DNA of 64,000 nt from Ostrea edulis (GCF_947568905.1 NC_079165.1:89156001-89220000); one strand, 5' to 3'. Shown: positions 13,366 through 62,659, counted from the first letter of the stretch. Notes: generated by a model from the letters alone, not told the origin. A program made the numbers and translations.

Positions 13366-13367
<2 letters not shown>

Positions 13368-13432
<65 letters not shown>
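13368..13432. repeat. (AG)n microsatellite
   Basis: Direct reading. Confidence 0.95.

Positions 13433-13435
<3 letters not shown>

Positions 13436-13768: not shown

Positions 13769-13770
<2 letters not shown>

Positions 13771-13815
<45 letters not shown>
13771..13815. repeat. (AG)n microsatellite
   Basis: Direct reading. Confidence 0.95.
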
Positions 13816-13821
<6 letters not shown>

Positions 13822-15410: not shown

Positions 15411-15443
<33 letters not shown>

Positions 15444-42050: not shown

Positions 42051-43746
42051 GAAGTGTACTCATCTCATGGAATGAAGTTCTAGGGCTTGATACCATATGC
42101 CACTGATTTTCACAAACAAATGGTCAAATCATATAGAGTTTACCCTCCATAATAATGCCAACTACCTAACACCCAATGGTAGTCACACCTAGCTGTACTT
42201 CGAGAGCAGTGGAGTGAAGTGTGACAGGCTGGTCAAGATATCCCGGTGGTCAGATTAATTACAATAATTAAACTCAAGATTATCTAAATGTTTATACAGA
42301 AAGGAGCCCAAATAAATTTACAGAATTGAATTTCTTTTGACTGCTCAGTCAATTGTCAGTAATGAATTCGTTATATTGCCATCCCTGCCTTATATTGCTC
42401 AAATTGGTCTTGATCATTTTTCTCTTCCGCTGCGGTCACATGTAAAGATGCGCGCTCAGTACGATCATATGCAAATTTTACCTTCCGAAGAGTGCCGAGA
42501 ATTAACTGAGTTGTATTAATAGGTATTGAATTTGAGGACTTCACGATGTTTTGGGATTCACATGCTTAAAACATAGATATTATATAATCTAATCATATAA
42601 TTACAAGCAAAGTTATTACCGTAAATCAGACTTAATAATTTATGCTGAAGCGGTACATATGTATCTTTAAAGTTGCCAATATATAGATGGTGCACTGTAT
42701 AGCTGTATATGATTAAAATCACTATACAATACAGGACTTAAATAGAGAAAACACACATTTAGAACCTTAGTTTATCCATTGTTTGATTATACGAAGATAC
42801 TTGTGTAAGCAGTTTCAAATTTTATTTCGTGCACGTGTCGAGGTATATACCATCCCGGTTAATGGGATTTAACCGATCTCAATATGTCCCAGTAACTGGT
42901 TGGACACATCCGCACGGAATACAATATGTCTCTTTTATTGATTGAAACAGTCATTTATCATGTTTATTATACTGTGTTTGTGTTTATATATATAAATTAT
43001 CTACACCCACCTTATCATTAACGGTGTGTTCTACGTGAGAATTTTGTGATTATAATTCATATGAATAATTATATTAAATTTATATTCATAAAAAATATGA
43101 GTTGTCTTTCTTCACGATTTGAAATATGGTGGAATGATATCTACTCGATATAATGAATAAAGGTATGCCTATGACAAAATGAACCCGTGCGTATCACAGA
43201 CATCTTAAGTATGGGTACTACCCCCCCCCCCCCCCCCCCCCCCCCCTTAATTCAATTCAATTATTTATTGATTCACCAAGCATGTTGGCATACAATCATG
43301 TTACACAATATGAAATAGGGCCTATATAATGACAATAAACTAATTACTAACAGTTTATTTACATATCTGTAAATACAAGTATATACCGTGATATTAGACT
43401 ATGTGTGCAATTTAGTATTGCATATTACGTAACTGTAGTTATAGCACTCTACTTTTGGTGCGCAATTCAAAACATTCATGTAAAAATTCACAAAACCTTC
43501 TAGCATGAACTACATTGACAGGGTTGCTTAGTACTTTACAATGGTTTTCCTTTGATATATCATAGTCTGAATTGTAGATGTTCAAAGGGTAATATTTCTT
43601 TCTTATATCTTTCTACATGAAGCAGTCATATAAAAAATGTAACTCATCTTTAATGAACCCGTGTGTACCACAGGCATCTGGAGTATGGGTACTAATCCCC
43701 CCCCCCCTTTTGATGATTCCCTGTCTATCTCAACTCTTGATTTATG

Positions 43747-43950
43747 CAAGAGTTGGTCGGCCAATGTTATCTTGGAGAGAGCTGACGGAGAAAGATCGAA
43801 GAGTATGGAAGCTCTCAACTGCCAACCCTCATGACCGGAAAGAATGGAGATCTGAGGCGAGATCTGCCATGCATGCAGCCAGCCAGCCAGCCAGATACCT
43901 GGAAGGGGGCCCACTAGTATTGACACTACCCGTGATACTGCACGGAAATA
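43747..43950 (+). mobile_element. C-terminal fragment of an RTE-type LINE ORF
   Basis: GRPMLSWRELTEKDRRVWKLSTANPHDRKEWRS matches the recalled RTE C-terminal GRP..W...D......A.DR..WR motif. Confidence 0.6.
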
Positions 43951-44139
43951 AAAAGGAACCGACAACAATCGCTCCCCCCCCCCCCCCCCCCCCAGCTTTA
44001 AAGATTGGCCTTCTACCCGTATGATAAAATGTATTGAATGAATTCACATATCACATGATGATACCAATATGACAAACAAGATAATATACCTTTTATTATA
44101 CCAGTAGAAGGCCAATCTTAAAAATGAGCTGAAAAATTA

Positions 44140-44470
44140 AGATGCACGCTGCTGCTTTTCACGATACACATTGTGCACATCTTTTCATGATAAATACTGC
44201 TTTTCATGATGCAATGCTTTTCGGAAATACACATTGTGCACAGCTTTCAAGATACACATGCACTGCAGCTTTACATGATACAGTGAACAGCTTTTCACAA
44301 AACAATGAAGCTTTACATATGATACACACTAGCTATTTCATGATACACAGTGCAGCTTCTCACAATAGTGCACATCTTTTTGTGATACACAGTGCCTTTT
44401 ATGATACACATTGCTTTTCACAAGGCATTGTGCACAGCTTTTCATGATACACAATGCAGCTTTTTATTAT
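44140..44470. repeat. Degenerate minisatellite (GCTTTTCATGATACAC core)
   Basis: Repeated ttttcatgatacac/attgtgcaca motifs. Confidence 0.7.
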
Positions 44471-45574
44471 CCATACTCACATCACAATTAAAGATATCTT
44501 CTACAGAAGTCAAAACAAAAGACATGCATACTCAATAATTAATTTAATTTTCAATGGTCATGTTTCCAAGGATAAATTTTCCAACAAATCATTGACAATA
44601 AATTTCCTCTGAATATCTAACATACAAATAAATATTAAATAACAATAAAGTTAACCAAAAAGTATATATAGCCTCAATTACAGCTAGCCCCAAGCGAAAA
44701 AATTTTCAATTTTGAACCAAGCCCAATCGGAATTTAAAAAAAAAATTGTCATCGAGAACATTGTAATCAGAAAACTGCATTTTGTTGATGTAGGTTTACA
44801 AATTAAATGAATTTATAAAGAAAACTAATTTCTTGATGAAAAATGCAAACAATTAGCATCAAATCACTTAGAAATTTGGACTTTAGAACATCTTATTTGC
44901 AAACAAAACACCTTTTTTTATCATTCCGGGGGAAAATAAAAATTCATATAAAATAATTAGGATCTTGTGTCACTCTTTCGATGGTGAAATCATGCTTCAT
45001 ATGAAGTGCTTAAACAAGCCAGTAATTAATATTTTACTGTAATGAGCAAAGTGAAATTGGCAAAGTGGTTCTGAAGAAGATGTGAAAAGTGGATAAAGAG
45101 AAGACAACATACAAAATTCACTGAGGGCTTATGCAAGCTAAAAAACCCTGCCAACATTCAAAATTAAAATAATTGAAAGTCTAAGAATAAAAAAGTACTT
45201 TGGTTGCAAATAAAACAAATATTCACATAATATCCCAATACTTTTGTTTTCTGAATCATTTGTAAAGAGAATTGCATACATGTATGTCCTAAAAAGGACA
45301 TAAAAGTGCAAGGTGGATCTTATAATGAATTCGATACAATAATAATTCAATTACTAACCATATTGACAATAATGTTTAAATGAACTAATCAGAGATTTTA
45401 TATAAAATCCATCGCTTTTATGTAGTAGTGGCCAAGGTGAATATGAAATCAATTTATCTTGACGATATACATATATCTATACAACACAAATACACGTATC
45501 ATCTAAACCAAATAACAGTTAAGTCAAACAAATACAGCCTATTTTCTACAAACACACACAACAGCCTATACAAA

Positions 45575-45965
45575 ATATCGTTCACCTGAGCAGCAGTCCC
45601 TAGCAATAAACAAGCTTGAGCAAAACTACCATTATACAGTACAGGCAGCTTGGTTCAGGAATAACTTTTCAAACAACTGAAAATTCATTAATTATCAAAC
45701 TTAATTATTAAACCTGACAACAAATTCATTAATTAACATATGCCCAGTGGTTCTGGAGAAGATTTCCTCTATATTGGCATGTAAAACTTTGATCCCCTAT
45801 TGTTACACCACCTTACCCCCAAGGGGCCATGATCTGAACAAATTTTAATCTACTCTGCTTTCATATTCTAGCCCAGTGATTCTTGAGAAAAAGATTTTCT
45901 TTACATATTCGCATTGATCCCCAATTGTGGCTTCAACATACCTTCAGCTCAGGTGAACCAAAAAA
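45575..45965. mobile_element. HINE-like repeat with Cg170-like internal units
   Basis: CCCCAAGGGGCCATGATCTGAACAAA unit; TTCAGCTCAGGTGA..AAAAA end, also seen at about 57080-57100. Confidence 0.55.
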
Positions 45966-46058
45966 TGTACAGACTCTATATTAACCCAAGCATCCATATC
46001 TTTAAACAATTAACCTTCATTTCAACAAACATAAATTCCCTTCACCCACATATGTTAA

Positions 46059-46885
46059 TGGGGCATGGACACAATTTTAGATAAAAAATTACAAAATTTG
46101 TTTTTTCAGTTTTAATGTATAGAATGTTGCAATAAGTTATTTCTAATGGTCAGCAAATATTTGAATGTCAGTTCTCGAGGTACATGGGAGATACAGAGCT
46201 CACAATTCTTTGTTAAGTAAACCAGGCTCGTGCCATGTTTGTCTACATACATGTAGGTTAAATATACTAGTAAAAATTTCGTTTAAGGTGGCTCACTTCA
46301 GCCAGAAACAGTTTCTCAAATCAGTACGAATTGATTTAATTATAAGATATACAATAAGTATATATGCCAAAAAGACAAAAAATATACAAATTTGGATTAA
46401 AAAAAAAATTAAAAAAATTATTTCAACACATATGAACAAAAGACTGCAGGATTTGAACTTGAGATCTGCAGTTCACCAGCCCAATGCTTTAACTACTGAG
46501 CTACAATGATAGACAAACACATCAATCGATACAAATAATTTCACAAAACATTTAAATCGCCATCTTGTAACGTGGTGTTATACAGAGTATAAGCTTTAGT
46601 GTAGTGAGTTACCATATAGAAATTTTTCAAATTACAAGTCAATTCTAAATATAATTATAAAACAGTTTCTAGTGTTTGACACATCTCATTTTGTTTTAAA
46701 CATATTTTCTAGTGGGCAATTTCAATGTATACAAAAATTTGTAAATGCTGTATCTCACTTGTAACTCAACAACTGATATTCAAATCTTGGTTGACAATTA
46801 GACATACTTCAATTAAGCATTGTAAACAATACAAATGGGAAAATGACATTTGAAATTTTTCTGCTAACATCCTGTCCATGCCCCT
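46059..46885. mobile_element. TTAA-flanked MITE (GGGGCATGGACAC...GTCCATGCCCC) with a nested element at about 46285-46612
   Basis: TIRs and TTAA on both sides; related copy at 47751-48605. Confidence 0.7.
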
Positions 46886-46918
46886 TTAAAAACGGGTACA
46901 ATGATTGTTGGGAAGAAT

Positions 46919-47362
46919 GACAAGAGGCCCACGGGTTTAGTTTTCATACAGTATCGGCAAACTTATACATAAATACTATATACTAAGTTTGGCCCCATTT
47001 TACATTTTATATCCCCTTGTTCCAAAGATGCTTCATACCAAATTTGAATAGAATTGGAATGATAGTTATCATGAAGAAGTTAAAAATATATATTGCTCAC
47101 ATTTAATAACTGACCAAATTGGCCCCAAAACCCTTACACCTGGGATCATCAAATTTACAATTTTGGTATAGGAATACATGCTCTATCTAAATATCCATTT
47201 AGTTTCAATAGCAATAATTTCCGGTCTCCTTCACCTACAGATGCTACATACCAAATTTAGTCAAGATTGGCCCAGTAGTTTCTGGGATGAAGTTGTTAAC
47301 GGACGAAGCCAGACGCAGAGCAATAGCAATAGGTCACCTGAGTGAATCAGGTGACATAAAAA
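46919..47362. mobile_element. HINE-like repeat
   Basis: ACAAGAGGCCCAC start; terminal hairpin GTCACCTGAGTGAATCAGGTGAC. Confidence 0.6.
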
Positions 47363-47750
47363 ATATGATGTAGTCCACATGTGGACTAAAGTACCAAAAT
47401 TTTCAAATTTTTAATTAAATCTATTCTTTACAGCAAGTCCTTTATCAAAGGATGTTATATTAAACAATGAGAGTAAAGTGGACCTTTCTAAAATACCCAA
47501 ACTGAAAAGGAAAATCAGGGGAGTTCCACGGCAATGTATGTATTCCCATAAGAATTTCTGATGGAAACATTTTTTGAATTTAATTCATTACATGCTAAAA
47601 TGACATTCCCATCATACCTTTCTATACACTTATAGCCAAGAGAGAGTGCAAAAACAAGAATGAGGGGGATAACACCATGCACATCAATGCTGCAGCAGAT
47701 TGTCAACTTGAACAAATTGCAACAGTACCTAGCTCTTTTGAGGTTAGTAA

Positions 47751-48605
47751 ACGGGCATGGACACAATTCGAGCTGAAAATTTTCAAATTTTACTTTTTCA
47801 TTTTTAATGTTTACAATGCTTAACTAAGCTATTTCTAATTACTTTTTGTACATAATTACTTTAAAGCAGATTAATAAAATTTTAAAGTTATTAACTTTCC
47901 CTTAATGCTTGAAAACATTTGCATGCAAAAGAAAACAGTGAAAAGATTATTTAAAAAGTAAATGGTTGGGAATCCCAACATGAGGTATAAAAATATAATA
48001 AAGACAACTGTCTAAATGGCTGAAAAAGCATGAAATAATGAATTACTGAGGTATTTGATATTTCATTTGTCTTAAACTTATGGCACGGTACTGTTGTAAC
48101 CAAATACATAGCTTTACACAGATAAGATCACCGATGATCTAAAAGTCTGAACTGGTCACGTGACCAACTTAAATTGGCCGAGTGAATATTGTTTGTAAAC
48201 ACTGACTTAAAATCACATAATTCTAGTTAAAACAGGTGAAGTAACGTATGACATGCCGTAAAGCCTCATAAATAAGTACGTGCAATGATTTAACAATGTT
48301 TTTACAAGGCAGAAAAAAATTGTCGAAATTCAGACCATACAACTTTTAAAATACTAGAAATTTTTTTAAAGCTGATTTTTCAAATTACATGTTAATTCTG
48401 ATCACAATTAAACAGTTTCTAGTGTTTGTCATATCTCATTTTGCTTCAAACATATTTATGCAAACAATTTTTGTTCTGTTTCTTCTTATTTTTGCAGTAC
48501 TTTTACCTTTAATATACATGTATATATAGTTAAGCATTGTAAACAGTAAAACTAACTGGGAAAACAAATTGTAAAAAATTTAGAGCACACTGTGTCCATG
48601 CCCCT
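47751..48605. mobile_element. Second GGGCATGGACAC-TIR MITE
   Basis: Inverted termini; internal similarity to 46059-46885. Confidence 0.65.
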
Positions 48606-49133
48606 TTCAAATATGTACAATGGTACCTTTAAAGATCACCATCAAATGTACATTGCCAAATGGCTACGTACTCCTTTAAAATATATATTTGAAGATCCTT
48701 ATCTTATTCAGTTACAATCCTATCATGTTTGCAGAACATTCTGGCAAAACGGTTCCCTTTTCAAAAAACCTTTTCTAATCAATTTTTTTTCTATTTCACA
48801 GAGCTATTCAACACCACTTCAAAGCTACATGCAGCAGCTGCTGATATACAAAGGATTTACCCCTATTGGCAGCTATTTCAATAAATTTGTATTGAGAGAA
48901 TTTGCACAAGAAGATAAAAAACTTGAGGTACACAAGCTCTTTGAAACAGACAAAATTTAAAGATATGTACAAGCAAATACAAAATTCAACCAAACTTAAA
49001 ATCATTTACATGTAAGTATTTCAAGTTACTTTAATTTTTTTTTTTTTTACATTTACACAAAGCAAAAATTTTAACGAATGAGTATATATAATATATAGTG
49101 CTAACACAATATATAATGTGCTATGTATTACAG

Positions 49134-49919
49134 TTGGTGAAAGAAAATGCAGTAATGTAATGTGTACTGGTGTACTACGGTATGATGGACTGGAGCATTG
49201 CATATTCCATACAAGCCACACTCTCATCGCTTATGAAGTCCTATTTGGGTTTATGGACTTGTTCACCCGAAACAGGTGGTTATTTCTATGTCGACAGTCC
49301 ATATATAGTACATGAATGAATAAGAGTAGGAGTTACATGTAACTATGAGAGTATTTTTAGATAATATTCAGCACATTTGTCAATTACCTTAAGCAACACC
49401 ACCACCACCCACTCCCTGGAATTTTGGACAAAGAAATAAAAATGTCTGTAACTCTAGTGGATATCGAATGATAAACTGATGTACAATACTAGGACACTGG
49501 AAAATTGTGTATATGTCACGCATAACAACAATACTTTCCACATTTTTTTTATGTTTTAAATTCTACCATCCATTTCTAAATGTGAAAAAGTTTAACATGT
49601 TAACTTTTTTTTAACGTTTAAATAGAACAACTCTATACACATACTTCTTGTCACTGAAAGACAACCATGAGAGGGGAAATGACAAGAAGTTCCAGCAAAC
49701 CTTTTCATATGCACATTTCAAATTTGCATGGTATGGCTTCTTGGAGAAGCTCTGCTCCACCATCAATTTTGAGGAGGGATTCAGATGTATACAATGTGGG
49801 TCAGCACCAGATAGATTGATTATGGATGCCACCACATTAGCCCACAGAAAAAATTTAAAAACCTGGACCAACAACCTACAACAGATGGCATCTGATAATG
49901 TATTGCACATTCCGTACAG
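49134..49919 (+). pseudogene. Two in-phase exons of a cysteine-cluster protein resembling KDZ-transposon/HMGXB3-associated CxC proteins; truncated
   Basis: Exons 49134-49275 and 49626-49919: GERKCSNVMCTGVLRYDGLEHCIFHTSHTLIAYEVL...FRCIQCGSAPDRLIMDATTLAHRK. No intact downstream exon found. Confidence 0.55.
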
Positions 49920-50380
49920 GTATGTGACTTTGTATAGCAATAGATGATGATTCACTTACACATGATTTCATTCCGACAATACACAAACATCTACAACTGG
50001 CAATGAAGCATTGTATAAAGTTTCAAGTCTATCTGATATGTTATATTGGATGAGAAGCAATCACAAGACTTTGTGATAGACAAACGGTAAAATGGCCTTA
50101 CATACTAGTGTTGTGTTTTGAACTTCAAAATTATTTTTTTAATTTTCAAGGAAAGAGCGATTTCGCTCCAATAACAAAAACTTCCAAACACACGTTTTTG
50201 ACTGATTTCTAAATTATTTTTTCCTATCAACATTCCATTAATATCAATCATATAGCAGGTTTCTTAGAACCATGTCCAATACTTTTAAGCGATAAGGCTG
50301 TATAAATGTTTAAAACTATACAAATTTAAGACCCTCACATACTGTCATTGTTTTGCTATAAAGATTTGCATTTTACTTAC

Positions 50381-53300
50381 ACTTTCAATGATGCCCCCTC
50401 ATTTTCATATCGTCCATTCATGGAACAGAGAAAGTAAATGGACCGTGACTCTGCACATAACACAGCCAAATACCAATGAACCCTATAAATGTTTGACATA
50501 TTAAATATAACATTAAGGATAGACTGGGAAGTGGCATATGAAAAAGATATTTCTTCATCAAAATATGTGCACCTTTACTAACATAACTGCCTATTATGAA
50601 ACTACATACATCTACATACAATGATAATCAATATTATAGGGGTACGTGTTTGCCCTGTTCTTGACTTTGCATTCTTTATAGGATTTGTGAGATTGATCAA
50701 TTTACTTTTCACACATGTACATAAATAACCATATTTGATTTTCAGATTCACTATACACTGTACATTCAGCTGAAGAATTTTTCTAATATTTTCACTCAAA
50801 TGCTTTCATTTCCACGGACAACTCCTACTGTATAAAATTGTTACAAATACGAAATAACTGTAATACATGTTACTGATTGGTACAATGAGGATGGCTCCTT
50901 TCTCTAAATCCACATCTAAAGCAGCAAGGACATTTTCCACCCCCAAGTAATTACATCCTGTCATGTCCAGGGGTCTACGGTTGCTGTTATCAATAAAATC
51001 AGACTATGCATGTATTAAATTTTCTTTTCAATATTCAGAGAATAATATTTCTTAATAGCTATATGTGACATTAAAACATAGGCCCAAATATTAGTGCTAC
51101 CTGACAAAAGACTCAGGAGACCCTGATTAAAATCCCAAACTAGATTATCATATTTTGTCTTATCCTGCAGAGTTCATTCTCAAATATAATTCATATAATT
51201 ACAAAGTTTGAGATTATATTTTCTTATATCATTTGTACATGAGCAAACGTATTTGTGTAAAGTAATCCCCATTCTTAACGGGTAATCAAAAAAGTATATG
51301 TAAGACAAGAAGGCTTCTGGCACATGGTTTTCAATTTTGGGTATTCTTAGAATATGTGCTACATAATACTTATAACAACTTACAGCTTTCCTTTGACAAG
51401 CAATTTCTGTGCAAAGAATGTTTCTAAGATGTACACATTCTTTGAGGGGATTTGTTCTTTCATTCTTCTACAAATCAAACAATACAATAAGAGGAGTTCT
51501 ACAGATTTAAACTAGATGTCATCATAAGACAGTAATAATTACATGCAAGTCTTTGCTTTTTAATGAATATAGTTACCATATAATATACAGTACACTAAAC
51601 CATATATATTCCTGATGCATAAATCAAGATGCATTGAGTATTCTGTTGAGCAAGTGTCCAAGGGCCATCCCAACCCCCATAATTTTCTGATTAATGGTTC
51701 AGATTCCAACCCCTAAAGTAAATATATTCCTGTTGGATGTGACACAATGCAGTAAGTAGGACAACAGACACTATAAACTGCACTTTGTGCATTGAGAAAA
51801 AGATGGAGAAAAGATTCAACATTGATATGACCAACATCATTCTTGTACATACTGAAGTACCTGTAGGAAAGTGAAACATACCCTTGTACATGAAAAAAAG
51901 AAGCTATAAAACACTCCACTTTGATCCAAAGTAAAATATAGGAATATATCAGATCCCTGGATAAGAACAATGTCAAGATGATTAAATGATAATGAAGTAT
52001 TGTACAAAATTTTAAGTAAATCGGATAACCCATATAGGAGAAGTGTTCACAAGCTATTTTACACCATTCATCTTTCCTAGATCCACTAAAATTTAAGGAT
52101 AACAATGGAATAACCTTGTTCTGACAATATGCACATCTACAAATGTCAATGAAGCATTGTACAAAGTTTCATGTCTATCTGATAAACCATACAAGATAAG
52201 CGTTCACTAGATTTTGGACAGAAACAAAAAGTACTTTGGGAATCATTTTGAATGTCCAATAGATCCGTGACTCATATTATTACCTTGCTACAACATCTAT
52301 AACAGCATCTGTCAGCCACCTCATAGGGTTGAGTGACCGGATGTCAACTTCATATAAGTCAATCCCCATTTCTACTCTATGACTACAAGTAAAACAATCA
52401 TCTACATGTATATATTAAGTAATTTATCTATCATATAAAACTGATTCATTGTTTTGTGAAATGAGATGGTTTAGCATCTTATCTTTTATATATGTACATG
52501 CATACTCCACACATTTCATTTTGTATTTGTAGATCTTAGAGATGTAAAGATTACCCATGTCATCTGTTTAGTGTTGCAGTTGCATCCAATAACACTGGTT
52601 CTCAATGTTATGGCAGAGGATTTTCAAATCATTCCATAAAGTATTCCTTATTATGGAGTTTTTACTGAATCATCAACATGAATATTATGATACAGCAAAG
52701 CAATCAGAGAGAGATTTCAGTTAATCCAAATCTAACTTAGGAAAAAATAGGAATTCATAACCATCAAAATGAATTGAAAAAAAACCCAACAACAACAAAT
52801 AAATGTGAAGGAAGTATTTGAAAGCAACTAAAAAACTCAAAACAATATAGAAACACCCAGAAAGATCCTCACACTCTTTTCTCCATTCCTGGGAGTCTGT
52901 ATCTCTCCAACTCAATCACAGGTTTGCTGGCACTTTTATATCCTTTAATAAGTATATGATTTTTATCATTCAAACTGCATCTGAGTGAAGTGCATATCAT
53001 TAGAATAACACTTAGACATGTTAAAAGAGGTTAGTAAAAGCAGAGAGTAAGTATGCAGTCAATATGCATATTGTTTTTCCTTCCCTGTTCTACTTGGTTC
53101 TTCATCTGCTGTAGTACGGTAAACAAAAGAACTATTTCATTGCAAACATGTATGCATAACAAAAAATTTGCAAACGAAATGGCACTTTTGATAAAGAAAA
53201 CAATCACCTGCAATCGTGGAAACTGGCACAGACAAATTGAAATGACCATCTATGGAGAAAATGGTCAAAGTAGTTCTTGCAGAGTGCAGGCAAGGACAGG

Positions 53301-56300
53301 GTGGGAATTTTATTTCAGTTTCATTAACATGCAGGGAAATGTTGCACTCGAGACAGCCTGCTAATAACAGCATCCTGAAGTGTCCTAATATGAACCACAC
53401 AGAGCATAAAGAGCAGAAACAAACAAGACAAAAGGAAAGCATGCTAAATATAAAATAAAAATACATTACTTATGTATCAGAAATTTAACAGAAATCTGAA
53501 ACTCAGTATGAAATGAAGGAATTTTCAAGGACTAGATGGTGACACAAGCTATGTAAAAGACTTTAAAACTGAATTGGCACAATAACATTTCATTAACTTC
53601 ATTGTAATCTTTACCCTTAGGTTCCATCAAGGCTTCTTCAAAACTCTTATTGATGTCAGAATTTCCCCTTATATCTAAGAGTTTGTAAATCTCCTCAACT
53701 TCCCCCAGGCTATCACTCCGTATTATGCGCTCATACTATTTAAAAGTACAGAATTTGGATAAAAATTGACTTACCTTATAAAAAATTCAAAACTCAAATG
53801 GAACATTTTATGTTTCAAAATAAAAATTAATATTCCTAAAAAAAACAACCTGTTGCACATAATGGTCAATGTGGATCTGCCCATGGACCTTGCACAGAAG
53901 ATCCAGATGGGCTGGGCTGCATGGAGCATACATATTTACGCATTCTTCAATGGTACTGCACCCTATCAGGGTTGCCCACCCTTCTCTTTTGATAGTACTA
54001 TATTAAAACAGACATGTTTAATACATAATAAATGTGCAGCACACAACAAAATACAACAACCAGTATTAATGCACACTCAATAGCTGCATATAAAATTCAC
54101 TTGGTATATATACCTGGGTTGAACCAAAGTCAATGGAAAGGTTTTGGGGGATGAAAAGCCTTCCCTCACCATTTTAGTGGTGTAATGTGTTGTGACAATG
54201 GATGCAACTACATCAGGTGCATTGCTCTTTAACAATTTCGACTGAACGTCACTGAACTTCCCCTACAGTGTAGGTCAAAGACGTATATGCATATCAAACT
54301 TTTCATTTTAAATCTAACTTTATCATATAATTAATCAATCAAATCATATATTCAATATTAACAAATTGCATTCCCATAAATTCACTATAAATTATGAAAT
54401 TCAAATGTTACTTTGTTCAGAAGTCTTTCAATGGTGTATGTTGAAAGGTTCTCCTTAAGAAAAAAGACATGTAAAATTTAAATACAGAAGAAATTGTGTA
54501 TTGAAAATATCATGCATTTTTTTCTTTATCCGGGTACTTCTGCTGATTACAACTTATCCCTATACATGTACCTTTGAATCTTTACCAGACATGAGTTTGG
54601 TCTATCAGAGGCAAAAGTCATTACTTTCAAATTTTTGAACAGAGTTAACATTATGATATTTTCCATCAGTAATAATAGAGTAGAAGGAAAAGAAAGAGGT
54701 TACTGATATTTATTTTGCTGTTGATGTTTCAAAAGAAAGCTGGCTATTATAAAGGTGTGTTGTCCATCATTAATCTAATCTACAGTCTAGATAAAAGTAT
54801 ACTCATTTTTTAATACTACCTCTGCTGTCTAAGTAACACAGCATTATCCACTTAAGATAAAGGAAGATTTGTCAAATACTGAAGTACCTTTTCTAAGTAG
54901 ACAGAGGCATCCTCTGGATTCTCTCCATTCCCTTGCTCAATGTCCTTTTTTCATTCAGAAAAATATATGTGATTGACATAAATCATTATCCAAATCAAAT
55001 GATGTATATAAATGTATCTTTTTATTTCTTCATCAGAATTATTCTTTGAAAATTACTTACTATATTATGTGATGTCTGCAAACAAATGAACACCCGTCGC
55101 AATTCTTCTGCTGATATTTTGTGATTATTGACTATAAATCAAATAAAGAGACCCATCGGACCATAAATGTTAGAGTATTTTGCAACTAAATACATTATAA
55201 AGGATTTAAAAATAGATGCACTGGTTAAAATCAGTCCATTTATACCATTATGTCCTGATCAAGTTCTTATTAGTGTTTAACTATCGATAGACTATGTCAT
55301 TTATTTTCAGCACATACAATCCACAGAATTATGATCACTACCGGTACATAATAAACGAAAAATGTAGCTTCATCTTGATAGATTAATTGGTAACATTTAA
55401 TACGTTAATTCTTACTGGTTCTATTTGGGTCCTGGAAATTCACATCATCAGGCCAGCCCTCTGGTTTCTTACACTTCCAAATACATTTTGCTATGTAAGA
55501 ACAGACTGAGATAATAATTCATAAAGGAAACATATAAAACAGTCAAAACAGTAATAGCTAGCAAGCTTATATGAAAAACAATAAGTGATTTTCATCTCCC
55601 TCATAGATGAAAATAACTAATGATTCAAAAGAAATTTGAATTGTCTCCGACACTTCAATGTAAGCATGTTTTATATTAGTATTAGATCTGTGGATGAGTG
55701 TGCGTAACAGGCATTATTAAAAGAGTAAAAGAAAAAGGAGGATAGACCAAAATAACCCAAATATATTGTTTCCTCAGAGTAAGCTCATTGAAAGACAAAG
55801 TTTTATAATACATGTATATATTATAAGCAGGTTTGTTCACATACAATATTTTAAATACTTCATTTCTTGATCAACAAATTTCTAGCTATATACTGTACCT
55901 TTCAATATCCCTCTCAGAACAAGAGGCAGTAATCTCCGCAGCACTGACTCTGGAGTACTTTCTGCATTTACTGACAACAAAGCCCTCCAGTCTTCTTCTG
56001 GAGTTGGTGTTCGATACTCTATTGATCATTATAACCATATAAGCCTACTAATTCTACAGGTTGAGAAATAAAGAGGGAGGGAAAGAGAGAGTTGATATTC
56101 TTTAGTTAATATTCAAATTTCAAAAGTATTGTAGGTGTGAAAATGTAACATAATCAAATTTTTTTCAAATTCATATACAGCAAATTTCAAGAGAGAAAAA
56201 AAAGAAAACAGATCAAAGAAAATACAGACTACCAATCATTGGATTAAGATTTTGACATAGTCCACAATACTCAATGGAATCACCTTGCTAATACTAGAAT

Positions 56301-57721
56301 TGTGCAATCATGTGGACCCACCTTTACATTAAATTTCAAAAATATTTGATAATGTTTCACTAATTGCAGTAAAATTTATATAACTCAGAAAAACTTTGAT
56401 CATAAGAGTTAATTTGAGCCAGGTTAGCTAAACATTTATGTAAACTCCAGGTCAATATCGGTAAATAAATGATAGAAAAGAGAAATACCTTTAGAAGATA
56501 GCAACATTTCAGCATGGTGCTCCATGCTGGCAGAGGTCATTTGCTTCGCAACATCATGACATATGTCCCGCAACCATGGTGAGACTTAAAAATAAAATAT
56601 CAAATCTATTTAGCTAAGGACTCTATGACAGAATATTCCATTTTACTTCATAGAAGCAAGCACAGGAAACATATTAAGCAAAAGTGTGTTATGCAACAAT
56701 TAACAAAATTGAAATACAACACAAAGTAACATAAGCAACAGGCCCATGGGCCACATTGCTCACCTGAAGACTTAAAAGCAAGGAGTGAAATTTTTTTGAT
56801 ATTACAGTTTATGAGGTTGATCGCACATAAATTAAACAAAAAATACCCTAGTGTGTCTTGGAAATCTGTTACCTCAACATGCAACCAAGGGTTGGATCAT
56901 GCTATAAACAAATCTTTGATTAAAGTAAGTGAGGATACTTGCATACAGATTCAACAATCTGCACCCCTATGGTTCTTGAACACATTTTGGAAAGTTTCCC
57001 CAAACACAACTGATGTTAAAATCCCTACCATCATCCTTCCCAGCCATCAGAAGTCATGGTACAAAAAGAATACTGTGTGCTTCAGCTCAGGTGAGCAAAA
57101 AATTAATATCAAATTGGAAATAAAATTAATACTTTATTTTTAAGCAATGATAATGAACAGTTAATAGTAAAAACACTAAACAAGACAACATAGTACCCTG
57201 TCCCTCCGTCTTCCCATTCATTGTATACAAAAACATAATGGGAATGTCAGGTTCCTCCTCCATAATTTCCTTGATCTAAAAGTTAAAACTAAATTCTGAC
57301 AAAACATGTCCAAAATTTGAAACAAGTCTGAAAGAAATCTTGTTACTATCAACCTGTTCAAATGTAAGCAAAATTTTTTCTGTTTCTTTTTGACATTTTT
57401 CTTGACATCTATGAAATAACTGTCTCTTGTTTTGATGTGTGTCATAGGTACATTTCACATTTTGTTATGGACTATGGTTTGATCAGTTAGCATTTGTAAT
57501 TAACTTTCTTTGTTGATATCACATCAATATATTGTTCAAGCATAAATCATATTTCACTTCTTGAGAAAGAAACTGGCATTGTAATCATTGATGGCATTGA
57601 AAGTGAAACTATAAATTTCTTTTTAACATAATCAATAAATGGCTCATCAATTTACCTTATTTGAAAGTCTTTTCAATTTTTCTCTTCTTCTCCTCCTGAT
57701 TTTCTCTTCTTCTTTTCTAAC
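50381..57721 (-). CDS. Uncharacterised multi-exon gene: NRF1-like DNA-binding segment, Cys-rich linker and Ulp1/SENP-like (peptidase C48) domain; 3' half may be decayed
   Basis: Eleven phase-consistent exons, 378 open codons: 57656-57721, 57197-57275, 56489-56584, 55899-56018, 55416-55490, 55061-55131, 54888-54944, 54114-54262, 53850-53997, 53615-53735, 53208-53360. Ulp1-like exons: 52284-52382, about 51600-51860, 51384-51467, 50867-50983, 50381-50482. Start codon and the 52.4-52.95 kb splicing not resolved. Confidence 0.7.
56716..57102. mobile_element. HINE-like repeat in an intron of the minus-strand gene
   Basis: AACAGGCCCATGGGCCACATTGCTCACCTGA start; TTCAGCTCAGGTGAGCAAAAA end. Confidence 0.65.
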
Positions 57722-58624
57722 CTACATTCATTAAAAATAAAATAAATAAAGTGTTTGGAAAGTACCATTTATTATTTTGTCTTGTCTTTTTATATTATCT
57801 AATAAGAACTGGTTCTTGCTGATGTCAATGTACCAATAAAGCATGAAAGTTACTGCTTATTTTATTTTCCTCGCCTAGCCGCTCATTTAACTACATTATC
57901 AACATGGTGGTAGCGGTTGGATTGTTTCTAAATGTTTTATTTAGACAAGCTTTCTCAAAATAAGTTTTTGTATTATTGCTTATAATATATCTTGAAAGAA
58001 ACGTTCACACCGTAAAACGTTTTAAATAATTTAGCTTAGTATTCTACATATTTAGACTACTAGAAAGAACTTCTGCATGCTGTGACCAATCCACTGTTCA
58101 TTCAAGCTGACATACCAAACTTTTTATTTGTGACATCAAGTGTTTTGAGTACAAGAGATGACTAGCATAAATGCTGTATATTTCCAATCTTGACAATCAA
58201 TGTTCCATGGTCTTACCGAAGCACTAGCTTGTACTCCGAGCTCTAATTACTAAAGCGCGCGAAATTATCCGAGCTAAATCTAAACCTTTAACAAGAATAT
58301 TTTTCACGCCAATCCCAGAAGTCCCTTGTCAAAAATGGCCAACGAATGTGAACTTCCGTTGATCTGCGGCCTCCTACCTCGAAAATTCAGTGCACCATTA
58401 GGCGTAATGTTTAACGAAATGCAAAGTTTATGAAAGGCAGGCTAAGATGATGAAACGGGCTGTTTCAGCTACCTAATTTCATTCATACGCATGTACTGAG
58501 TATTTGGCAAATAGATATTATTTAAATTGAACCTGATCAAAGCATGAGCATTACAAAATATGTTCATATTTGATGTTACGCTTGCTCAAACGGTAGCACC
58601 GTCAACATATTATTGTTCCTGTGG

Positions 58625-58919
58625 GATAATGCATAAATTTTTACAGAAGAATAAACTAGTAGCCGGCACTTTCTAATCCGAATTTCCTAAAAATAAAAAC
58701 CTAGTAATAACTGGTTTAAATAGATCACATATGCTACCAAATACATGTGATTTCCAAAGGTATGATATATTCAAGTTACATGTATTCTTATCCATATACA
58801 ACTATGATAATGCATAAATTTTCAAAGAATAAACTAGTAGCCGGCACTTTCTAATCCGAATTTCCTAAAGACAATAACCTATTAATAACTGGTTTATATA
58901 GATCACATATGCTACCAAA
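58625..58919. repeat. Direct duplication of about 115 bp with 181-bp period
   Basis: GATAATGCATAAATTTT...CACATATGCTACCAAA at 58625 and 58806. Confidence 0.85.
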
Positions 58920-59639
58920 CGTTTCAAAATGAGAATTCATATCCAGTTTATAAGTGGACATTTGATAAAACTGGAAATATTTACTTGTCATCGATTACTT
59001 TACTTATTTAACGTACATATTTCTCTCGAGGCGCATCAACCACGTTACAATCCATCGCTGCCATATTGTTTTCTGCGGTCTTGATCTGGCGCATGCCTAT
59101 TGCATACTTACGACCAGTAACTGGGACTTTTTCAGTTCAGTTAAATCCCGTTAACTGGGACTATAAATACCTCACGTGTCGCATGTTTTGACAGTTCATA
59201 TTTTCGCGGATTTTTTTTCGGACTTTTTCAATGGAAATTGCATTCCGAAGGAAGTCGCCATTTTGATTGTTTATAAATATCTCGAGGGATTTTACTGTAT
59301 CCCGACGCTAGAGGTAAGATTCATAAGACGAATTATTAAAATGTATATTCATATTGATATTTTATGCATTATTGGGAGCAAACAGTTTAATTATCCCTTA
59401 TACTGTGGCGATGAAGCCGGGGGAATGTAAAGTAAAGTAAATTTTATTTAAAGTCGGCACTATATACATTCAACATGTCAAACCGACTATCACATTGTAC
59501 ACTACACTGTACTACTACCACCTGACTGCTGCTACTACTACTGTCCAACATGTTAACGTTATCATTGCACCTTTTCATTTTATTGCGGAGTGTTGAATTA
59601 CGAACGAATAGTCTAATAACCTTTCTCTACACTTTAAGG

Positions 59640-59870: not shown

Positions 59871-59991
59871 TACATCATGATATCTAACAATTGCATCAGC
59901 ATGTGTATAGTAAGATATCATGACACATGAGCAGCAACTATTTTTCAAACCTGGCAGTCAAGTTTACTTGTATTTTTCTCTCTTGCTAAAG

Positions 59992-62659
59992 ATGAACATG
60001 GATCTGAACCACTTGGAGTCAATCTTCCCTTCCCTTGTGGAGTCAGGCATCTTACTGTCCTCTCTGGCCGTGATTTTTGTCTTTTGGAATCACAGTTGTC
60101 TGGACACTTCACTGCTGAGACTACTGAAGTGTCACCTTCCAAGATGCAGGAATTTCTGTTTGGTCCTAACAGCACTTGTAATGATGAACAATAACTTAAT
60201 GAAAAATTTTGCTCTCACCATGGACAGCTGTAGGATTGCTGTTGTTGCACTTGTTGTCCAAATATCATTCTGGCTGCAGAGTAAGCCTGTCTCCAATAAA
60301 TGTATTGGGACCCAAAATATTCAGATCGTCGACAAATCAGTCGGTGGATCCCCAGTAACACACAGGGATCAGGCGAGCAGTGCCTCCACCTGCTGTAGAG
60401 TCGGGGTACCTCGCTATCTCCTGTCCCCATCCTCCTCCTCAGGACCTCAGTCTGCAGTGAACATTGAAGAGGAGTTGAGAAAGCCTTATGTGGAGGCTTT
60501 CAGGTATCTTAACGACGAGAAAGATGTTACCAACAAGGATCTTGTGACTGCCATTCAGTACCTGGACACACTCAATGGAGGTAAGTTTAGTATATTCATT
60601 TTTATACACCCATCATCAGACAGGATGTATTATGTTATGGCGCTGTCCGTGCCTCCGTTCGTGTGTCCATAGGATGTCATGTTTTCATAACCTTTTTCCG
60701 TAACTGATGCATTTACAGCATTGAAATTTGGTCACAATTTTTCCCTCAAGAAGCGAAAGAGGGAGTTTGCATTTCAGCTGGATTGGTACATCATGACCTA
60801 CTTTAGGGCTAAAAGTAGGTCAACTGTTTGCCATACTTTTTTCATTACAGATACAGATATTGCCTTGAAATGTAGTCACAAGCTTTCTCTCGGAGGAATA
60901 TACAAATTCAATTTGCATTTCAGCTGAATTGGTGTATCATGACCTACTTTAGGGCTAAAACTAGGTCAAAGAGTTTTCAGATTTTTTTTTCATTATGGAT
61001 ACAGGTGTTGCCCTGAAATGTGGTCACAACGTTCTTCTCAGAGAAATACAGATTCAATATACATTTCTGAATCAGCTTAATTGGTGCACCATGACATACT
61101 TTAGGGCTTAAAGTAGGTCAAAAAGTTTTCTTGACTTTTTCTCACAATGGATACAGATATTGCACTGAAATTTTGTCATCACTGTCGGACAGGCGTATGA
61201 TGTACCGTTTACAGTGTTCGAAATTGGTTTAAAACATAGTATAGACCACTGGTCTATGCGAAAACAAGATGACGTAGACCTCATCGAAGTGGCATAGACC
61301 GCAATATTGGGGGGAAAAACCCACAAATTTAAAACATTTTCATTTATTTCTAATGTACTTAGAAAGCATATTTTCTTTCCATTTCAATATCCTCCTTTCC
61401 TCATAATGTTTATCAGGCAGCGGCTTACCATGCAGGGTCCTTTGGGATAACATTATTGCTTTAAATCAAGAAAATCGGCATAGACAATTTGGACCATCTC
61501 AATTACAATTGGCGTAGACCAGTGTCATTTGACACAGACTCTGTCTATCGGTCAATGGTTAATTTTGAACACTGCGTCTACAGTACTCTTGTTGTTTTAA
61601 TATGGTTTCCTTAATATCAAATAACTTCAAATTTAATGGTTTCACCATCGTCAGAAACCCACAGTTGATTACCCTTCATTCTTCTCTCCATCACCCGTGG
61701 GTCCATTCCTTCCTACTCGCTCGTTCTCATGAATTATTGATGAGTCAATTTGATTGGGCGCTCATGGTATACCCTGAGCGAATTTGTCCAATCAACAAGA
61801 CGCTTTCAGCCCAATTTCGGTATACAATTCTTGTTTTAGCAAAGTTAAGTTGGTGCTACCTTAAAAACAGAAGAGTTCCATTATCATAACGATTACTTTG
61901 AGTGGACGATATTTTTAAATATTTATTCCTAAAATGAACAAGTAGGAATGAATGGACCCACGGGTGATGGAGAGAGGAAGGAAGTATAATTAACTGTGGG
62001 TATCCGACAATGTGGTTTCACCAACAAATGCAATTTTGTTTGACAGTAAATTCCTGGACAGCTAATTTATATTTAATATTCCTCTTGAATGAAAACTATG
62101 TTGTTAAGCATTTGATTTTGAGGTCTTTTCCCACCACCAAAACAACGAAAACTGGTGGTCAGTGAATAGGGAAGAAACCGCAGTATATACGCAACACATC
62201 TCACAATAAATAATGCATACAATGTAGTTAAAAATATATTTTAAAAAACCAAACAAGAAACCTTAATTAAGTTGTTTTATGTTCATTCACCGGCAATTTT
62301 TTACAGAATCTCTGTTCTTCTGTTTAGTGTTTATGTATTGTATGCAGTAGTCTGACGTAATTATGAAAGATTTGCTGTAAAATTCAATGAATGCTATTTA
62401 TAGACCCTAGACATTATCAGATAAATTGACTGCTGTTCACATGTTTGGTCTTTAACAGGGATAGAGGTCCACAGAGGTGCTGCGAATTTGAATGATGCAG
62501 TGGATCACATCCAGTGGATGCGACAGAAGTCACGCCTGGATGACTCTGGACTTCCCCGGGAATACTCTTATGAGGAGCTCCGTGACATCGTGGTGGAGGG
62601 GAATGGTTATTCCCTAGAGGATTTTGAGAGAGTGCTGGAAAAATGCCTGGAAAACAATG
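59992..62659 (+). CDS. Uncharacterised protein, two exons visible, continues beyond 62659
   Basis: Exon 59992-60580 (ATG after TAAAG, ends G|GTAAGT, phase 1) joins exon 62459-62659 (phase 1 to 1) in frame: ...IQYLDTLNGGGIEVHRGAANLNDAVDHIQWM...; hydrophobic N-terminal part. Confidence 0.65.
60598..61200. mobile_element. HINE-like element with about 3 internal tandem units of about 150 bp
   Basis: TTTTTATACACCC...CTGTCCGT start; repeated CATGACCTACTTTAGGGCTAAAAGTAGGTCAA. Confidence 0.7.
61212..61574. mobile_element. Short-TIR element (CAGTGTTCGAAATT...AATTTTGAACACTG)
   Basis: 14-bp inverted termini with 1 mismatch; no TSD seen. Confidence 0.5.
61640..62030. mobile_element. Foldback element, about 80-bp inverted arms
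   Basis: CTCTCCATCACCCGTGGGTCCATTC at about 61684 and its reverse complement at about 61950. Confidence 0.65.

What the first reader, a model, noticed from the sequence alone, without database searches (positions are those of the whole stretch)
49134..57721. Convergent CxC-type and NRF1-like/Ulp1-like genes: candidate large KDZ/Zisupton-type transposon with an internal deletion
Two intron-rich genes point at each other and both lose recognisable coding sequence in the same window (about 49.9-50.4 kb). The plus gene stops before any transposase core. The minus gene stops before the expected protease Cys motif. Established: KDZ-superfamily elements carry CxC cysteine clusters, and Zisupton encodes a SUMO-protease-like domain. 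Inference: both genes belong to one element that lost its middle. No catalytic KDZ motif, TIR or TSD was identified by eye.
Basis: inference. Interest (0 to 1): 0.75.

Follow-up and report, generated by a model that had tools for sequence, protein, structure and literature searches.

The report
Dead two-gene KDZ transposon in oyster
The two facing gene fragments are the remains of one 16.3-kb cut-and-paste transposon of the KDZ (Kyakuja/Dileera/Zisupton) kind in the flat oyster. Its inverted ends and 7-bp target duplication are still visible, its middle has been deleted, and its two-gene layout recurs in scallop, annelid and jellyfish genomes.

Summary

**Plus strand.** The exons at 49134-49275 and 49626-49917, plus two missed upstream blocks at 47430-47558 and 48801-48928, belong to a metazoan family whose full-length members carry Pfam CxC4 and KDZ transposase domains. 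No KDZ core is present anywhere in the window.

**Minus strand.** The gene carries an NRF1-like "KPxGWP" exon and Ulp1-like N-terminal and His-box exons with consistent splice phases. It has no catalytic-Cys exon.

**New here:**
- A 61-nt inverted repeat (42840-42900 and 59113-59173, 80% complementary) is flanked by an exact 7-bp direct repeat, ACGTGTC. It encloses both genes, so the element spans 42840-59173.
- A CxC4-KDZ gene faced by a convergent gene with Ulp1, PHD or NRF1-like modules recurs in Owenia, Argopecten (two loci) and Clytia.
- In Clytia, two loci are 97-98% identical over about 20 kb that includes both genes.

The copy is dead. It has lost at least 8 kb from its middle and about 1 kb of the CxC4 exon.

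**Caveats.** Ulp1 and NRF1 assignments for the window rest on weak exon-level profile hits. No RNA data were found and no second copy shares these ends. Exons were never joined.

The scan had noted this stretch before (s1-271534) and a paralogous gene elsewhere in this genome (s1-287570).

The parts
42833..42839 (.). Left target-site duplication, ACGTGTC
   Evidence: Exact 7-bp direct repeat of 59174-59180, directly outside the inverted repeat. Only 2 of the 53 inverted pairs in the window have flanking direct repeats of 5 bp or more.
42840..42900 (+). Left terminal inverted repeat (5'-GAGGTATATACC...)
   Evidence: 61 nt, 80% complementary to 59113-59173. blastn E=2e-10. The core motif occurs only at these two places in the window, with 0 expected by chance.
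47430..47558 (+).
   Evidence: tblastx gives 67% identity to L001 1-129, collinear with the other blocks.
48801..48928 (+). Upstream exon E0 of the KDZ-family gene (...LLIYKGFTPIG...KKLE)
   Evidence: 59% identical to L001 1767-1904. It has AG/GT borders, and its phase fits exon A.
49127..49275 (+). Exon A, the 3' remnant of the CxC4 exon; its 5' part with the first Cys clusters is deleted
   Evidence: 76% identical to P0009 residues 63-112, whose first 62 residues have no counterpart in the window. Homology to L007 starts at 49127. It maps to Pfam CxC4 through P0043.
49626..49917 (+). Exon B: end of CxC4 plus the 'C..CG..P..LIMDATT' motif that precedes the KDZ core; last surviving plus exon
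   Evidence: One search gave hits at E of about 1e-34. One search found 160 family members. Searches place it just after CxC4 and before KDZ in P0020, P0043 and P0097.
49918..50380 (.). Deletion junction between the two truncated genes, with a fragment of a high-copy interspersed repeat at about 49987-50090
   Evidence: No coding similarity. Summed contig word depth in the bin holding it (50000-50199) is about 25,000, against 50-90 in the neighbouring bins (X1), and assembled contigs break there. Related copies lie at 51976-52027 and 52133-52184.
50381..50482 (-). Exon U3, Ulp1-like His box (VHWYLAVL...IYFLCSMNG); last surviving minus exon, ending at a GTAAGT donor
   Evidence: Searches show the splice phases. 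The motif reading rests on established knowledge of C48 peptidases. There is no Pfam hit.
50867..50983 (-). Exon U2 (...GAILIVPISN), which joins U3 to give 'LIVPISNMVHW'
   Evidence: phases fit U1 to U2 to U3.
52284..52382 (-). Exon U1, N-terminal motif of the Ulp1 catalytic domain (DIRSLNPMRWLTDAVIDVV)
   Evidence: A profile built with the Argopecten and Owenia counterparts finds only yeast Ulp1 (1euv) and SENP2 (3zo5) in the PDB, at E=1.4 and 1.7.
52873..52980 (-). Candidate exon before U1 (...ELERYRLPGMEKR)
   Evidence: Open frame with AG/GT borders, and its phase fits U1. Identified by eye only.
55416..55490 (-). NRF1-like exon (KCIWKCKKPEGWPDDVNFQDPNRT)
   Evidence: Pfam PF11001 at E=0.012, hitting the same profile positions as the Owenia and Clytia partner-gene exons. 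The joint profile finds only human NRF1 in the PDB (8k3d at E=0.09, 8k4l at E=0.32).
55899..56018 (-). Exon preceding the NRF1-like exon (YRTPTPEEDWRALL...LVLRGILK)
   Evidence: Open frame with AG/GT borders, and its phase fits the next exon. Identified by eye only.
57656..57721 (-).
   Evidence: One search shows AG/GT borders in phase 0.
59017..59064 (-). Candidate first coding exon of the minus gene (MAAMDCNVVDAPREKY), about 50 bp inside the right TIR
   Evidence: an ATG, a GTACGT donor and phase 0, which fits N1. This is inference only.
59113..59173 (-). Right terminal inverted repeat
59174..59180 (.). Right target-site duplication, ACGTGTC

Best explanation
Window 42840-59173 is one fossil copy of a cut-and-paste DNA transposon of the KDZ superfamily, in the metazoan CxC4-KDZ clade, inserted in the flat-oyster genome.

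**Intact elements of this clade (shown by comparison).** They carry two multi-exon genes that point at each other.
- The first is a transposase with a zinc-chelating CxC4 module followed by the KDZ catalytic core.
- The second is an accessory gene that combines an NRF1-like DNA-binding-type module, often a PHD finger, and a Ulp1/SENP-type cysteine protease.

**Inferred mechanism.** The transposase binds the roughly 60-bp terminal inverted repeats, cuts the element out and reinserts it, duplicating 7 bp of target. The accessory protein is brought to chromatin or to the element by its DNA- and histone-binding modules and removes SUMO-type marks. This would counter SUMO-dependent silencing of the element, much as fungal KDZ elements carry TET/JBP enzymes thought to counter methylation-based silencing.

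**This copy (shown).** It cannot do any of this.
- One deletion of at least 8 kb removed the 3' parts of both genes: the KDZ core and the protease exon with the catalytic Cys. It left a 463-bp junction that holds a piece of a high-copy repeat.
- A second deletion of about 1.1 kb removed the first cysteine clusters of CxC4.

The copy is present in the contigs of every sequencing run laid on it.
For: **Family of the plus gene.**
- Exon B finds 160 relatives.
- The long relatives carry CxC4 and KDZ: P0020, P0097, P0104, P0138, P0151 and P0102.
- They come from scallops, amphioxus, Clytia and Owenia.
- Exon A and the start of exon B lie inside CxC4, as mapped through P0043.

**Ends of the element.**
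- The 61-nt TIR pair is 80% complementary and unique in the window.
- It is flanked by the exact 7-bp repeat ACGTGTC.
- Among 53 inverted pairs in the window, only this one and a small MITE have flanking repeats of 5 bp or more.
- A 7-bp TSD is reported for Kyakuja, and 8 bp with TIRs for Zisupton (PMC12730594).

**Pairing elsewhere.**
- Owenia L012: a KDZ gene on the plus strand. On the minus strand lie QQTNGTDCG (Pfam C48, E=0.025), a His box, a PHD finger (E=4e-7) and 'KPEWWPEGIVF'.
- Argopecten L010: a convergent gene 0.8 kb downstream with QQQINNTDCG (C48, E=3e-4, above the Pfam cut-off).
- Argopecten L008: a convergent C48+PHD gene.
- Clytia L013 and L014: two loci 97-98% identical over about 20 kb that includes the KDZ gene and a convergent gene. 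That gene has KPSWWP (PF11001, E=0.002) and a weak C48 hit (E=0.01). The two loci have unrelated left flanks and a sharp boundary.

**Deletions.**
- There is no KDZ core and no Cys box anywhere in the window.
- The 5' part of the CxC4 exon is missing.

Multi-exon genes are typical of Zisupton-type elements (PMC9297572).
Against: - No second copy with the same TIRs was available, and the TIR motifs are absent from the 12 loci held when they were searched (L001-L012; L013 and L014 were fetched later and not searched). The ends therefore rest on a single TIR/TSD pair at 80% identity.
- No empty site was seen.
- No window exon of the minus gene reaches Pfam significance. Single exons find nothing in the PDB. 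The profile hits to NRF1 and Ulp1 have E of 0.09 to 1.7.
- Direct sequence similarity between the window's minus gene and the partner genes of other taxa is limited to short motifs.
- The C. angulata paralogue L006 and the amphioxus locus L011 show no partner gene within 10 kb.
- The remaining minus exons keep open frames and consistent phases, which a long-dead gene need not do.
- The anti-silencing role of the accessory gene is inference only.
Confidence: 0.75

Rival explanations
1. The minus gene is a host gene, either a domesticated or an ordinary member of an oyster NRF1-like/Ulp1 family. It only happens to lie next to a decayed KDZ fragment, and the two were never part of one mobile unit.
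For: The minus exons keep open frames and matching splice phases. The C. angulata KDZ paralogue L006 has no such neighbour.
Against: The TIR pair with a 7-bp TSD encloses both genes. The same convergent pairing occurs in three other phyla or classes, and in Clytia it is copied as a unit. The catalytic Cys exon is missing from the whole window.
Confidence: 0.12
2. The inverted repeat and the 7-bp repeat are unrelated to the genes. They could be two fragments of some other repeat that lie in opposite orientation, with a chance flanking match. The true limits of the KDZ remnant would then be unknown.
For: Only one pair was observed, at 80% identity, and no other copy is available. The interior holds several other nested repeats.
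Against: The similarity ends exactly at the 7-bp direct repeat on both sides. In 51 other inverted pairs in the same window, no flanking repeat is longer than 2 bp. The candidate first exon of the minus gene starts about 50 bp inside the right arm. A 7-bp TSD fits KDZ relatives (PMC12730594).
Confidence: 0.08
3. The truncated minus gene is still expressed and has been co-opted. It would act as an NRF1-like DNA-binding protein with an inactive protease stub, so the locus would be functional rather than dead.
For: Open frames and consistent phases run over at least seven exons. The locus appears fixed in the individuals sampled.
Against: No RNA run holds the stretch. No stop or poly(A) context was identified after the 50381 donor. 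The choice of exons by open frame biases towards apparent intactness.
Confidence: 0.05

Closest known systems
Zisupton DNA transposons (Bohne et al. 2012, Mol Biol Evol 29:631; cited in PMC12730594 and PMC9297572)
   Same: Both belong to the KDZ transposase superfamily and have multi-exon genes that look like host genes, TIRs, a cysteine-cluster zinc module and an association with a SUMO-protease (Ulp1) type domain. That the name refers to zinc finger, SUMO protease and transposon is my own recollection, not a tool result.
   Different: Here the TSD is 7 bp, not 8. The cysteine cluster is CxC4 (PF18717), not the CxC7 defined on platyfish Zisupton (PMC12062965). The protease sits in a separate, convergent gene together with an NRF1-like module. 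This copy lacks the transposase core.
Kyakuja and Dileera elements of fungi (Iyer et al. 2014, PNAS 111:1676; Kojima 2025, PMC12730594)
   Same: Both belong to the KDZ superfamily. Kyakuja also makes 7-bp TSDs. Both carry a second gene that acts on chromatin marks (TET/JBP dioxygenase in fungi), thought to help the element escape silencing.
   Different: Fungal Kyakuja has CA..TG ends and no TIRs. Its passenger is TET/JBP, not Ulp1/PHD/NRF1-like. The hosts here are animals.
Ulp1-carrying Mutator-like elements
   Same: Both are DNA transposons that carry a Ulp1-type protease, sometimes with a PHD finger.
   Different: The transposase superfamily differs (MuDR/Mutator, with 9-10 bp TSDs), and there is no CxC4/KDZ gene.
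NRF1/EWG DNA-binding domain (PDB 8k3d and 8k4l; Pfam Nrf1_DNA-bind) and Pfam PF11001 (YDR124W-like helical bundle)
   Same: The exon motif W-x3-KP-x-[GW]WP-x-D-[VIL]-x-F aligns with NRF1 'KPGWGKESCKPIWWPEDIPW' and with PF11001 positions 43-87.
   Different: Only about 20-45 residues match, with E of 0.002 to 0.3. Pfam Nrf1_DNA-bind itself gave no hit. The rest of the domain could not be compared because exons were not joined.

Membership tests
KDZ transposon superfamily (Pfam PF18758 and relatives) | KDZ transposase catalytic core encoded in the element | tested here: not met
   No KDZ-core similarity is found anywhere in the window (tblastn with 152 family proteins; tblastx against L006, which holds a KDZ gene). 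The core is present in homologues of exon B. Its absence here is read as a deletion, so this copy is a remnant, not a coding member.
KDZ transposon superfamily (Pfam PF18758 and relatives) | N-terminal CxC cysteine-cluster module associated with KDZ transposases | tested here: met
   Exon A and the start of exon B align to P0043 residues 36-126, which lie inside its Pfam CxC4 hit (residues 9-126, E=3e-6, above the cut-off). Pfam did not hit the window exons directly. The first Cys clusters are deleted.
KDZ transposon superfamily (Pfam PF18758 and relatives) | Sequence homology of the surviving protein to proteins that carry the KDZ domain | tested here: met
   Exon B matches 36-72% over 60-95 residues to P0001-P0152. 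The KDZ-bearing P0020, P0097, P0138 and P0151 are among them.
KDZ transposon superfamily (Pfam PF18758 and relatives) | Terminal structure with a 7-8 bp target-site duplication | tested here: met
   A 61-nt TIR pair with an exact 7-bp TSD, ACGTGTC. The 7 bp for Kyakuja and 8 bp for Zisupton are from PMC12730594.
Zisupton in the strict sense | 8-bp TSD | tested here: not met
   The 7-bp repeat is exact, and the 8th positions differ.
Zisupton in the strict sense | CxC7-type cysteine cluster, as defined on platyfish Zisupton | tested here: not met
   The relatives hit CxC4 (PF18717) only. No CxC7 hit appeared.
Zisupton in the strict sense | Phylogenetic placement of the transposase core within the Zisupton clade | not testable with these tools
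   The core is absent from the window, and no reference set for Kyakuja, Dileera and Zisupton was at hand.
Peptidase C48 (Ulp1/SENP) | N-terminal 'L.P..WLND.vI' motif and 'PI...HW.L' His box in the right order | tested here: inconclusive
   The motifs are present with consistent splice phases. The U1 profile finds only Ulp1 and SENP2 in the PDB, but at E=1.4 and 1.7. No Pfam C48 hit was obtained on any window exon.
Peptidase C48 (Ulp1/SENP) | Catalytic Cys in a 'Q.N..DCG' box (full His-Asp-Cys triad) | tested here: not met
   No such motif occurs in any frame of the 64-kb window (minus strand downstream read through). It is present in the partner genes of Owenia and Argopecten.
NRF1/EWG DNA-binding domain | Significant match to Nrf1_DNA-bind or to the solved NRF1 DNA-binding domain | tested here: inconclusive
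The three-species exon profile finds only NRF1 chains in the PDB (E=0.09 and 0.32), over 21 residues. Pfam's best hit is PF11001 (E=0.002 to 0.012), not Nrf1_DNA-bind.

The most novel reading that the evidence does not exclude
Animal CxC4-KDZ transposons are, as a rule, two-gene elements. The transposase gene is faced by a conserved accessory gene that joins an NRF1/EWG-type DNA-binding module, a PHD finger and a Ulp1 desumoylase. This layout is shared by cnidarians, annelids and molluscs.

The accessory protein would be a transposon-borne anti-silencing factor aimed at SUMO-dependent heterochromatin. The NRF1/EWG DNA-binding fold would then have a large, unrecognised reservoir in mobile elements.
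Probability: 0.35. Interest if true: 0.65.

Novelty: new variant of a known kind. Interest (0 to 1): 0.45.

Why it matters
For this locus, the result turns two puzzling 'genes' into one dead transposon with defined ends. That is useful for annotation, because such multi-exon elements pass as host genes.

The comparative by-product is more interesting. A convergent accessory gene with NRF1-like, PHD and Ulp1 modules travels with CxC4-KDZ transposases in four distant animal lineages. Fungal KDZ elements similarly carry TET/JBP enzymes. If the accessory protein removes SUMO marks at the element, it would be a counter-silencing device of animal DNA transposons. This is testable with intact copies from Owenia, Argopecten or Clytia. 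It could also point to a source of the many Ulp1/PHD genes of molluscs and of NRF1-type DNA-binding domains.

Tried and rejected
- **Pfam on single window exons.** Nothing was significant for C48, Nrf1_DNA-bind, CxC or KDZ. One call failed on a frame error.
- **PDB phmmer on single exons.** Only noise was returned.
- **Word-indexed protein search on the U3 stretch.** There were no candidates. Short exons lie outside what that database and its length window can reach, so the third search was not spent.
- **RNA evidence.** No RNA run holds the stretch. Read laying gave only same-species DNA contigs (X5 is identical where it was laid). No splice joints, no divergence for a dN/dS test and no empty site were obtained.
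- **Exact look-up of the 250-aa ORF at 59920-60669**, tried in order to reach an annotated copy of the locus. It is not on record, and P0044 is not on record either.
- **Direct similarity between the window's minus gene and partner genes of other taxa.** tblastx gave only the KPxWWP exon at E=0.17, and blastp-short gave noise.
- **TIRs in other loci.** None are convincing, probably because the loci do not reach both ends.
- **PHD finger in the window's minus gene.** None was found.
- **His-box exon alignment across taxa.** It was too poor to use.
- **P0054's match at 39.6-40.3 kb.** It is a LINE reverse transcriptase in a chimeric gene model, not KDZ.
- **Iyer et al. 2014 (PMC3918813).** The paper is not held. 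Two paper searches gave nothing on Ulp1 in KDZ elements.

Full report
**What is there.**

The window is AT-rich (about 34% G+C), intron-rich animal DNA. Earlier notes of this scan place it in an oyster, specifically the flat oyster.

On the plus strand, two exons with AG/GT borders join in frame.
- Exon A is 49134-49275.
- Exon B is 49626-49917.

On the minus strand, three exons join in frame.
- U1 is 52382-52284.
- U2 is 50983-50867.
- U3 is 50482-50381.
- Read together they give '...NPMRWLTDAVIDVVA | S NRRPL...GAILIVPISN | M VHWYLAVLCAESRSIYFLCSMNG...'.

Further upstream on the minus strand lie three more exons.
- 'YRTPTPEEDWRALL...LVLRGILK' is at 56018-55899.
- 'KCIWKCKKPEGWPDDVNFQDPNRT' is at 55490-55416.
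- A basic exon is at 57721-57656.

Exon B ends at a GT donor and U3 ends at a GTAAGT donor, 463 bp apart. Nothing coding is recognisable between them.

**The plus gene.**

Exon B found three fragments at E of about 1e-34. A full HMMER scan with the closest of these (P0001) found 160 relatives. The long relatives carry Pfam CxC4 (PF18717) and KDZ (PF18758). They include P0020, P0097, P0104, P0138, P0151 and P0102. They come from scallops, amphioxus, the hydrozoan Clytia, the annelid Owenia and a jellyfish.

P0043 has a CxC4 hit at residues 9-126 (E=3e-6). It aligns with exon A at residues 36-88 and with exon B at residues 88-179. Exon A and the start of exon B are therefore the C-terminal part of CxC4. 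The rest of exon B ('GFRCIQCGSAPDRLIMDATTLAHRK') is the conserved stretch just before the KDZ core.

Both are collinear with a related copy, L001.

The '49134 acceptor' is probably not a real exon start. In relatives (P0009 on L007) the open frame runs on for at least 62 residues upstream, and homology to the window begins abruptly at 49127. About 1.1 kb has therefore been lost here, comprising part of an intron and the first Cys clusters. It sits next to a polymorphic TA-rich run.

No KDZ-core similarity exists anywhere in the window. Other copies in oysters (L001, L006 in Crassostrea angulata, L007) carry their own, different deletions. This is the usual pattern for an old DNA-transposon family.

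**The minus gene.**

No single exon reaches significance in Pfam or the PDB. The word-indexed protein search found nothing for U3.

Support came from profiles built with counterparts in other animals (described below).
- The profile of the KPxWWP exons (alignment A2) finds only two PDB sequences out of 177,635. Both are human NRF1 (8k3d at E=0.09, 8k4l at E=0.32), aligned at 'KPGWGKESCKPIWWPEDIPW'.
- The same exons from oyster, Owenia and Clytia each hit Pfam PF11001 at the same profile positions, with E of 0.012, 0.005 and 0.002.
- The profile of the U1-type exons (alignment A3) finds only yeast Ulp1 (1euv) and SENP2 (3zo5). They align at the canonical start of the catalytic domain, at E=1.4 and 1.7.

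These hits are weak but specific.

A catalytic 'Q.N..DCG' box is absent from every frame of the window. It was also not seen when reading the minus strand downstream to 42 kb. The protease is therefore truncated after the His box.

**One element: the ends.**

An inverted repeat of 61 nt lies at 42840-42900 and 59113-59173. It is 80% complementary (blastn E=2e-10) and encloses both genes. Its core motif occurs nowhere else in the window, and none is expected by chance.

The similarity stops exactly where an identical 7-bp direct repeat begins on each outer side.
- Left: ...TCGTGC ACGTGTC | GAGGTAT...
- Right: ...ATACCTC | ACGTGTC GCATG...

As a control, I scored all 53 inverted pairs of at least 20 nt in the window for flanking direct repeats.
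- 46 pairs have none.
- 5 pairs have 2 bp.
- Only two pairs have 5 bp or more: this one, and a small MITE at 61646-62012 with a 9-bp TSD.

A candidate first exon of the minus gene ('MAAMDCNVVDAPREKY', with its phase fitting the next exon) starts about 50 bp inside the right arm. The element is therefore 42840-59173, or 16,334 bp. KDZ relatives make 7-bp (Kyakuja) or 8-bp (Zisupton, Dileera) duplications (PMC12730594).

**One element: the pairing recurs.**

I looked up the genomic places of long family members.

- **Owenia (L012).** The CxC4-KDZ gene lies on the plus strand at 10001-19206. It is followed on the minus strand by four features.
  - 'QQTNGTDCGFAV' is at 23.5 kb (Pfam C48, E=0.025).
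  - 'SEHWILL' is at 24.5 kb.
  - A PHD finger is at 25.8 kb (E=4e-7).
  - 'KPEWWPEGIVF' is at 29.0 kb.
- **Argopecten (L010).** A convergent gene starts 0.8 kb after the KDZ-family gene. It holds 'QQQINNTDCG' (C48, E=3e-4, 21.0 bits against a cut-off of 20.7) and a U1-type exon.
- **Argopecten (L008).** A convergent gene with precomputed C48 and PHD hits lies 7.8 kb downstream.
- **Clytia (L013 and L014).** These two loci lie on different contigs.
  - They are 97-98% identical over about 20 kb that includes the KDZ gene and a convergent gene.
  - That gene has 'KPSWWP', a zinc finger and a weak C48 hit.
  - Their left flanks are unrelated and the homology starts sharply.
  - L013 also holds a third, internally deleted copy.
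  - The pair is therefore copied as a unit.
- **No partner seen.** There is none within 10 kb in the decayed C. angulata copy (L006) or in the amphioxus locus (L011). The Pecten locus has only 2 kb of downstream sequence.

**The deletion.**

In Owenia and Argopecten, the distance from the exon-B equivalent to the His-box or U1 exon of the partner is about 9-12 kb. That stretch holds the KDZ core and the Cys-box exon. In the window the same distance is 463 bp.

A single deletion with one breakpoint in each gene's intron is the simplest account. The junction holds a roughly 100-bp piece of a very high-copy interspersed repeat. Summed contig depth in the bin holding it (50000-50199) is about 25,000, against 50-90 in the neighbouring bins, and contigs break there. 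Further pieces of the same repeat lie in the U1-U2 intron. Whether recombination between such repeats caused the deletion is speculation.

**How it most likely works.**

Shown:
- the family membership of the plus gene;
- the ends of the element;
- the recurrent two-gene layout;
- the losses in this copy.

Inferred from knowledge of KDZ and other DDE-type elements:
- The transposase binds the inverted ends and cuts and pastes the element, duplicating 7 bp of target.

Inferred by analogy:
- The accessory protein is targeted by its NRF1-like and PHD modules.
- Its Ulp1 domain removes SUMO-type modifiers, which would counter silencing.
- Kojima proposes a comparable role for the TET/JBP genes of fungal KDZ elements (PMC12730594).

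This copy encodes neither a catalytic transposase nor a catalytic protease, so it is inert. If intact relatives exist in the genome it could at most be moved in trans. It is present, nearly without differences, in the contigs of all five runs from three studies.

**Limits.**

- There is no RNA evidence.
- There is no second copy of these ends and no empty site.
- The Ulp1 and NRF1 assignments for the window are motif-level plus weak profile hits.
- Several minus-strand exons are by-eye models chosen for open frames.
It could not show NRF1 kinship. My PDB profile result gives modest support for that kinship.
- I could not check Repbase or the original Zisupton and KDZ papers. Whether the convergent accessory gene is already described for animal KDZ elements therefore remains open.

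**Verdict.**

- Observation: confirmed.
- Interpretation: supported and sharpened.
- The locus itself is an ordinary dead transposon.
- The conserved two-gene architecture with an NRF1-like/PHD/Ulp1 partner is a moderately interesting variant of a known kind.

Noticed in passing
window 61646-62012: A small MITE-like element: 80-nt inverted arms (61646-61725 and 61933-62012, 85% complementary) flanked by an exact 9-bp direct repeat, TGGTTTCAC.
   Followed up: partly
window 39623-40270 (+): A fragment of a non-LTR retrotransposon reverse transcriptase. It is 30% identical over 215 residues to the RT part of the chimeric gene model P0054 (E=5e-17). It lies outside the KDZ element.
   Followed up: no
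window ~49987-50090, ~50666-50699, ~51620-52190: Pieces of very high-copy interspersed repeats inside the element's introns. Summed contig depth is 100 to 1000 times that of the flanks, and assembled contigs of all runs break there.
   Followed up: partly
window 43593-44021 (+): An open stretch ending '...NPHDRKEWRSEARS...' next to poly-G/poly-P runs. It looks like the tail of a LINE ORF2 nested in the left part of the element. This was read by eye only.
   Followed up: no
window 46055-46213, 46731-46889, 47743-47840, 48566-48607: Four copies, in both orientations, of a short repeat ('GGGGCATGGACACAATT...') around and between the upstream KDZ exons. They are probably nested MITEs.
   Followed up: no
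window 58625-58741 and 58806-58919; 43178-43233 and 43652-43707: Subterminal direct repeats inside both ends of the element (117 nt at 92% identity on the right, 56 nt at 87.5% on the left). They could be transposase-binding repeats.
   Followed up: no
L013 663-4247: The Clytia locus holds a third, internally deleted and truncated copy of the same KDZ element just upstream of the full one. The family therefore seems recently active in Clytia hemisphaerica.
   Followed up: partly
L010 30604-30822 (-): The first exon of the Argopecten partner gene reads '...SLQQGDCFFSSVSK...', which recalls an OTU-type cysteine protease motif. There was no Pfam support.
   Followed up: no
window 49083-49097: A TA-rich run is polymorphic between individuals, with 7-nt insertions and two substitutions. 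It lies right at the presumed breakpoint of the CxC4-exon deletion.
   Followed up: no
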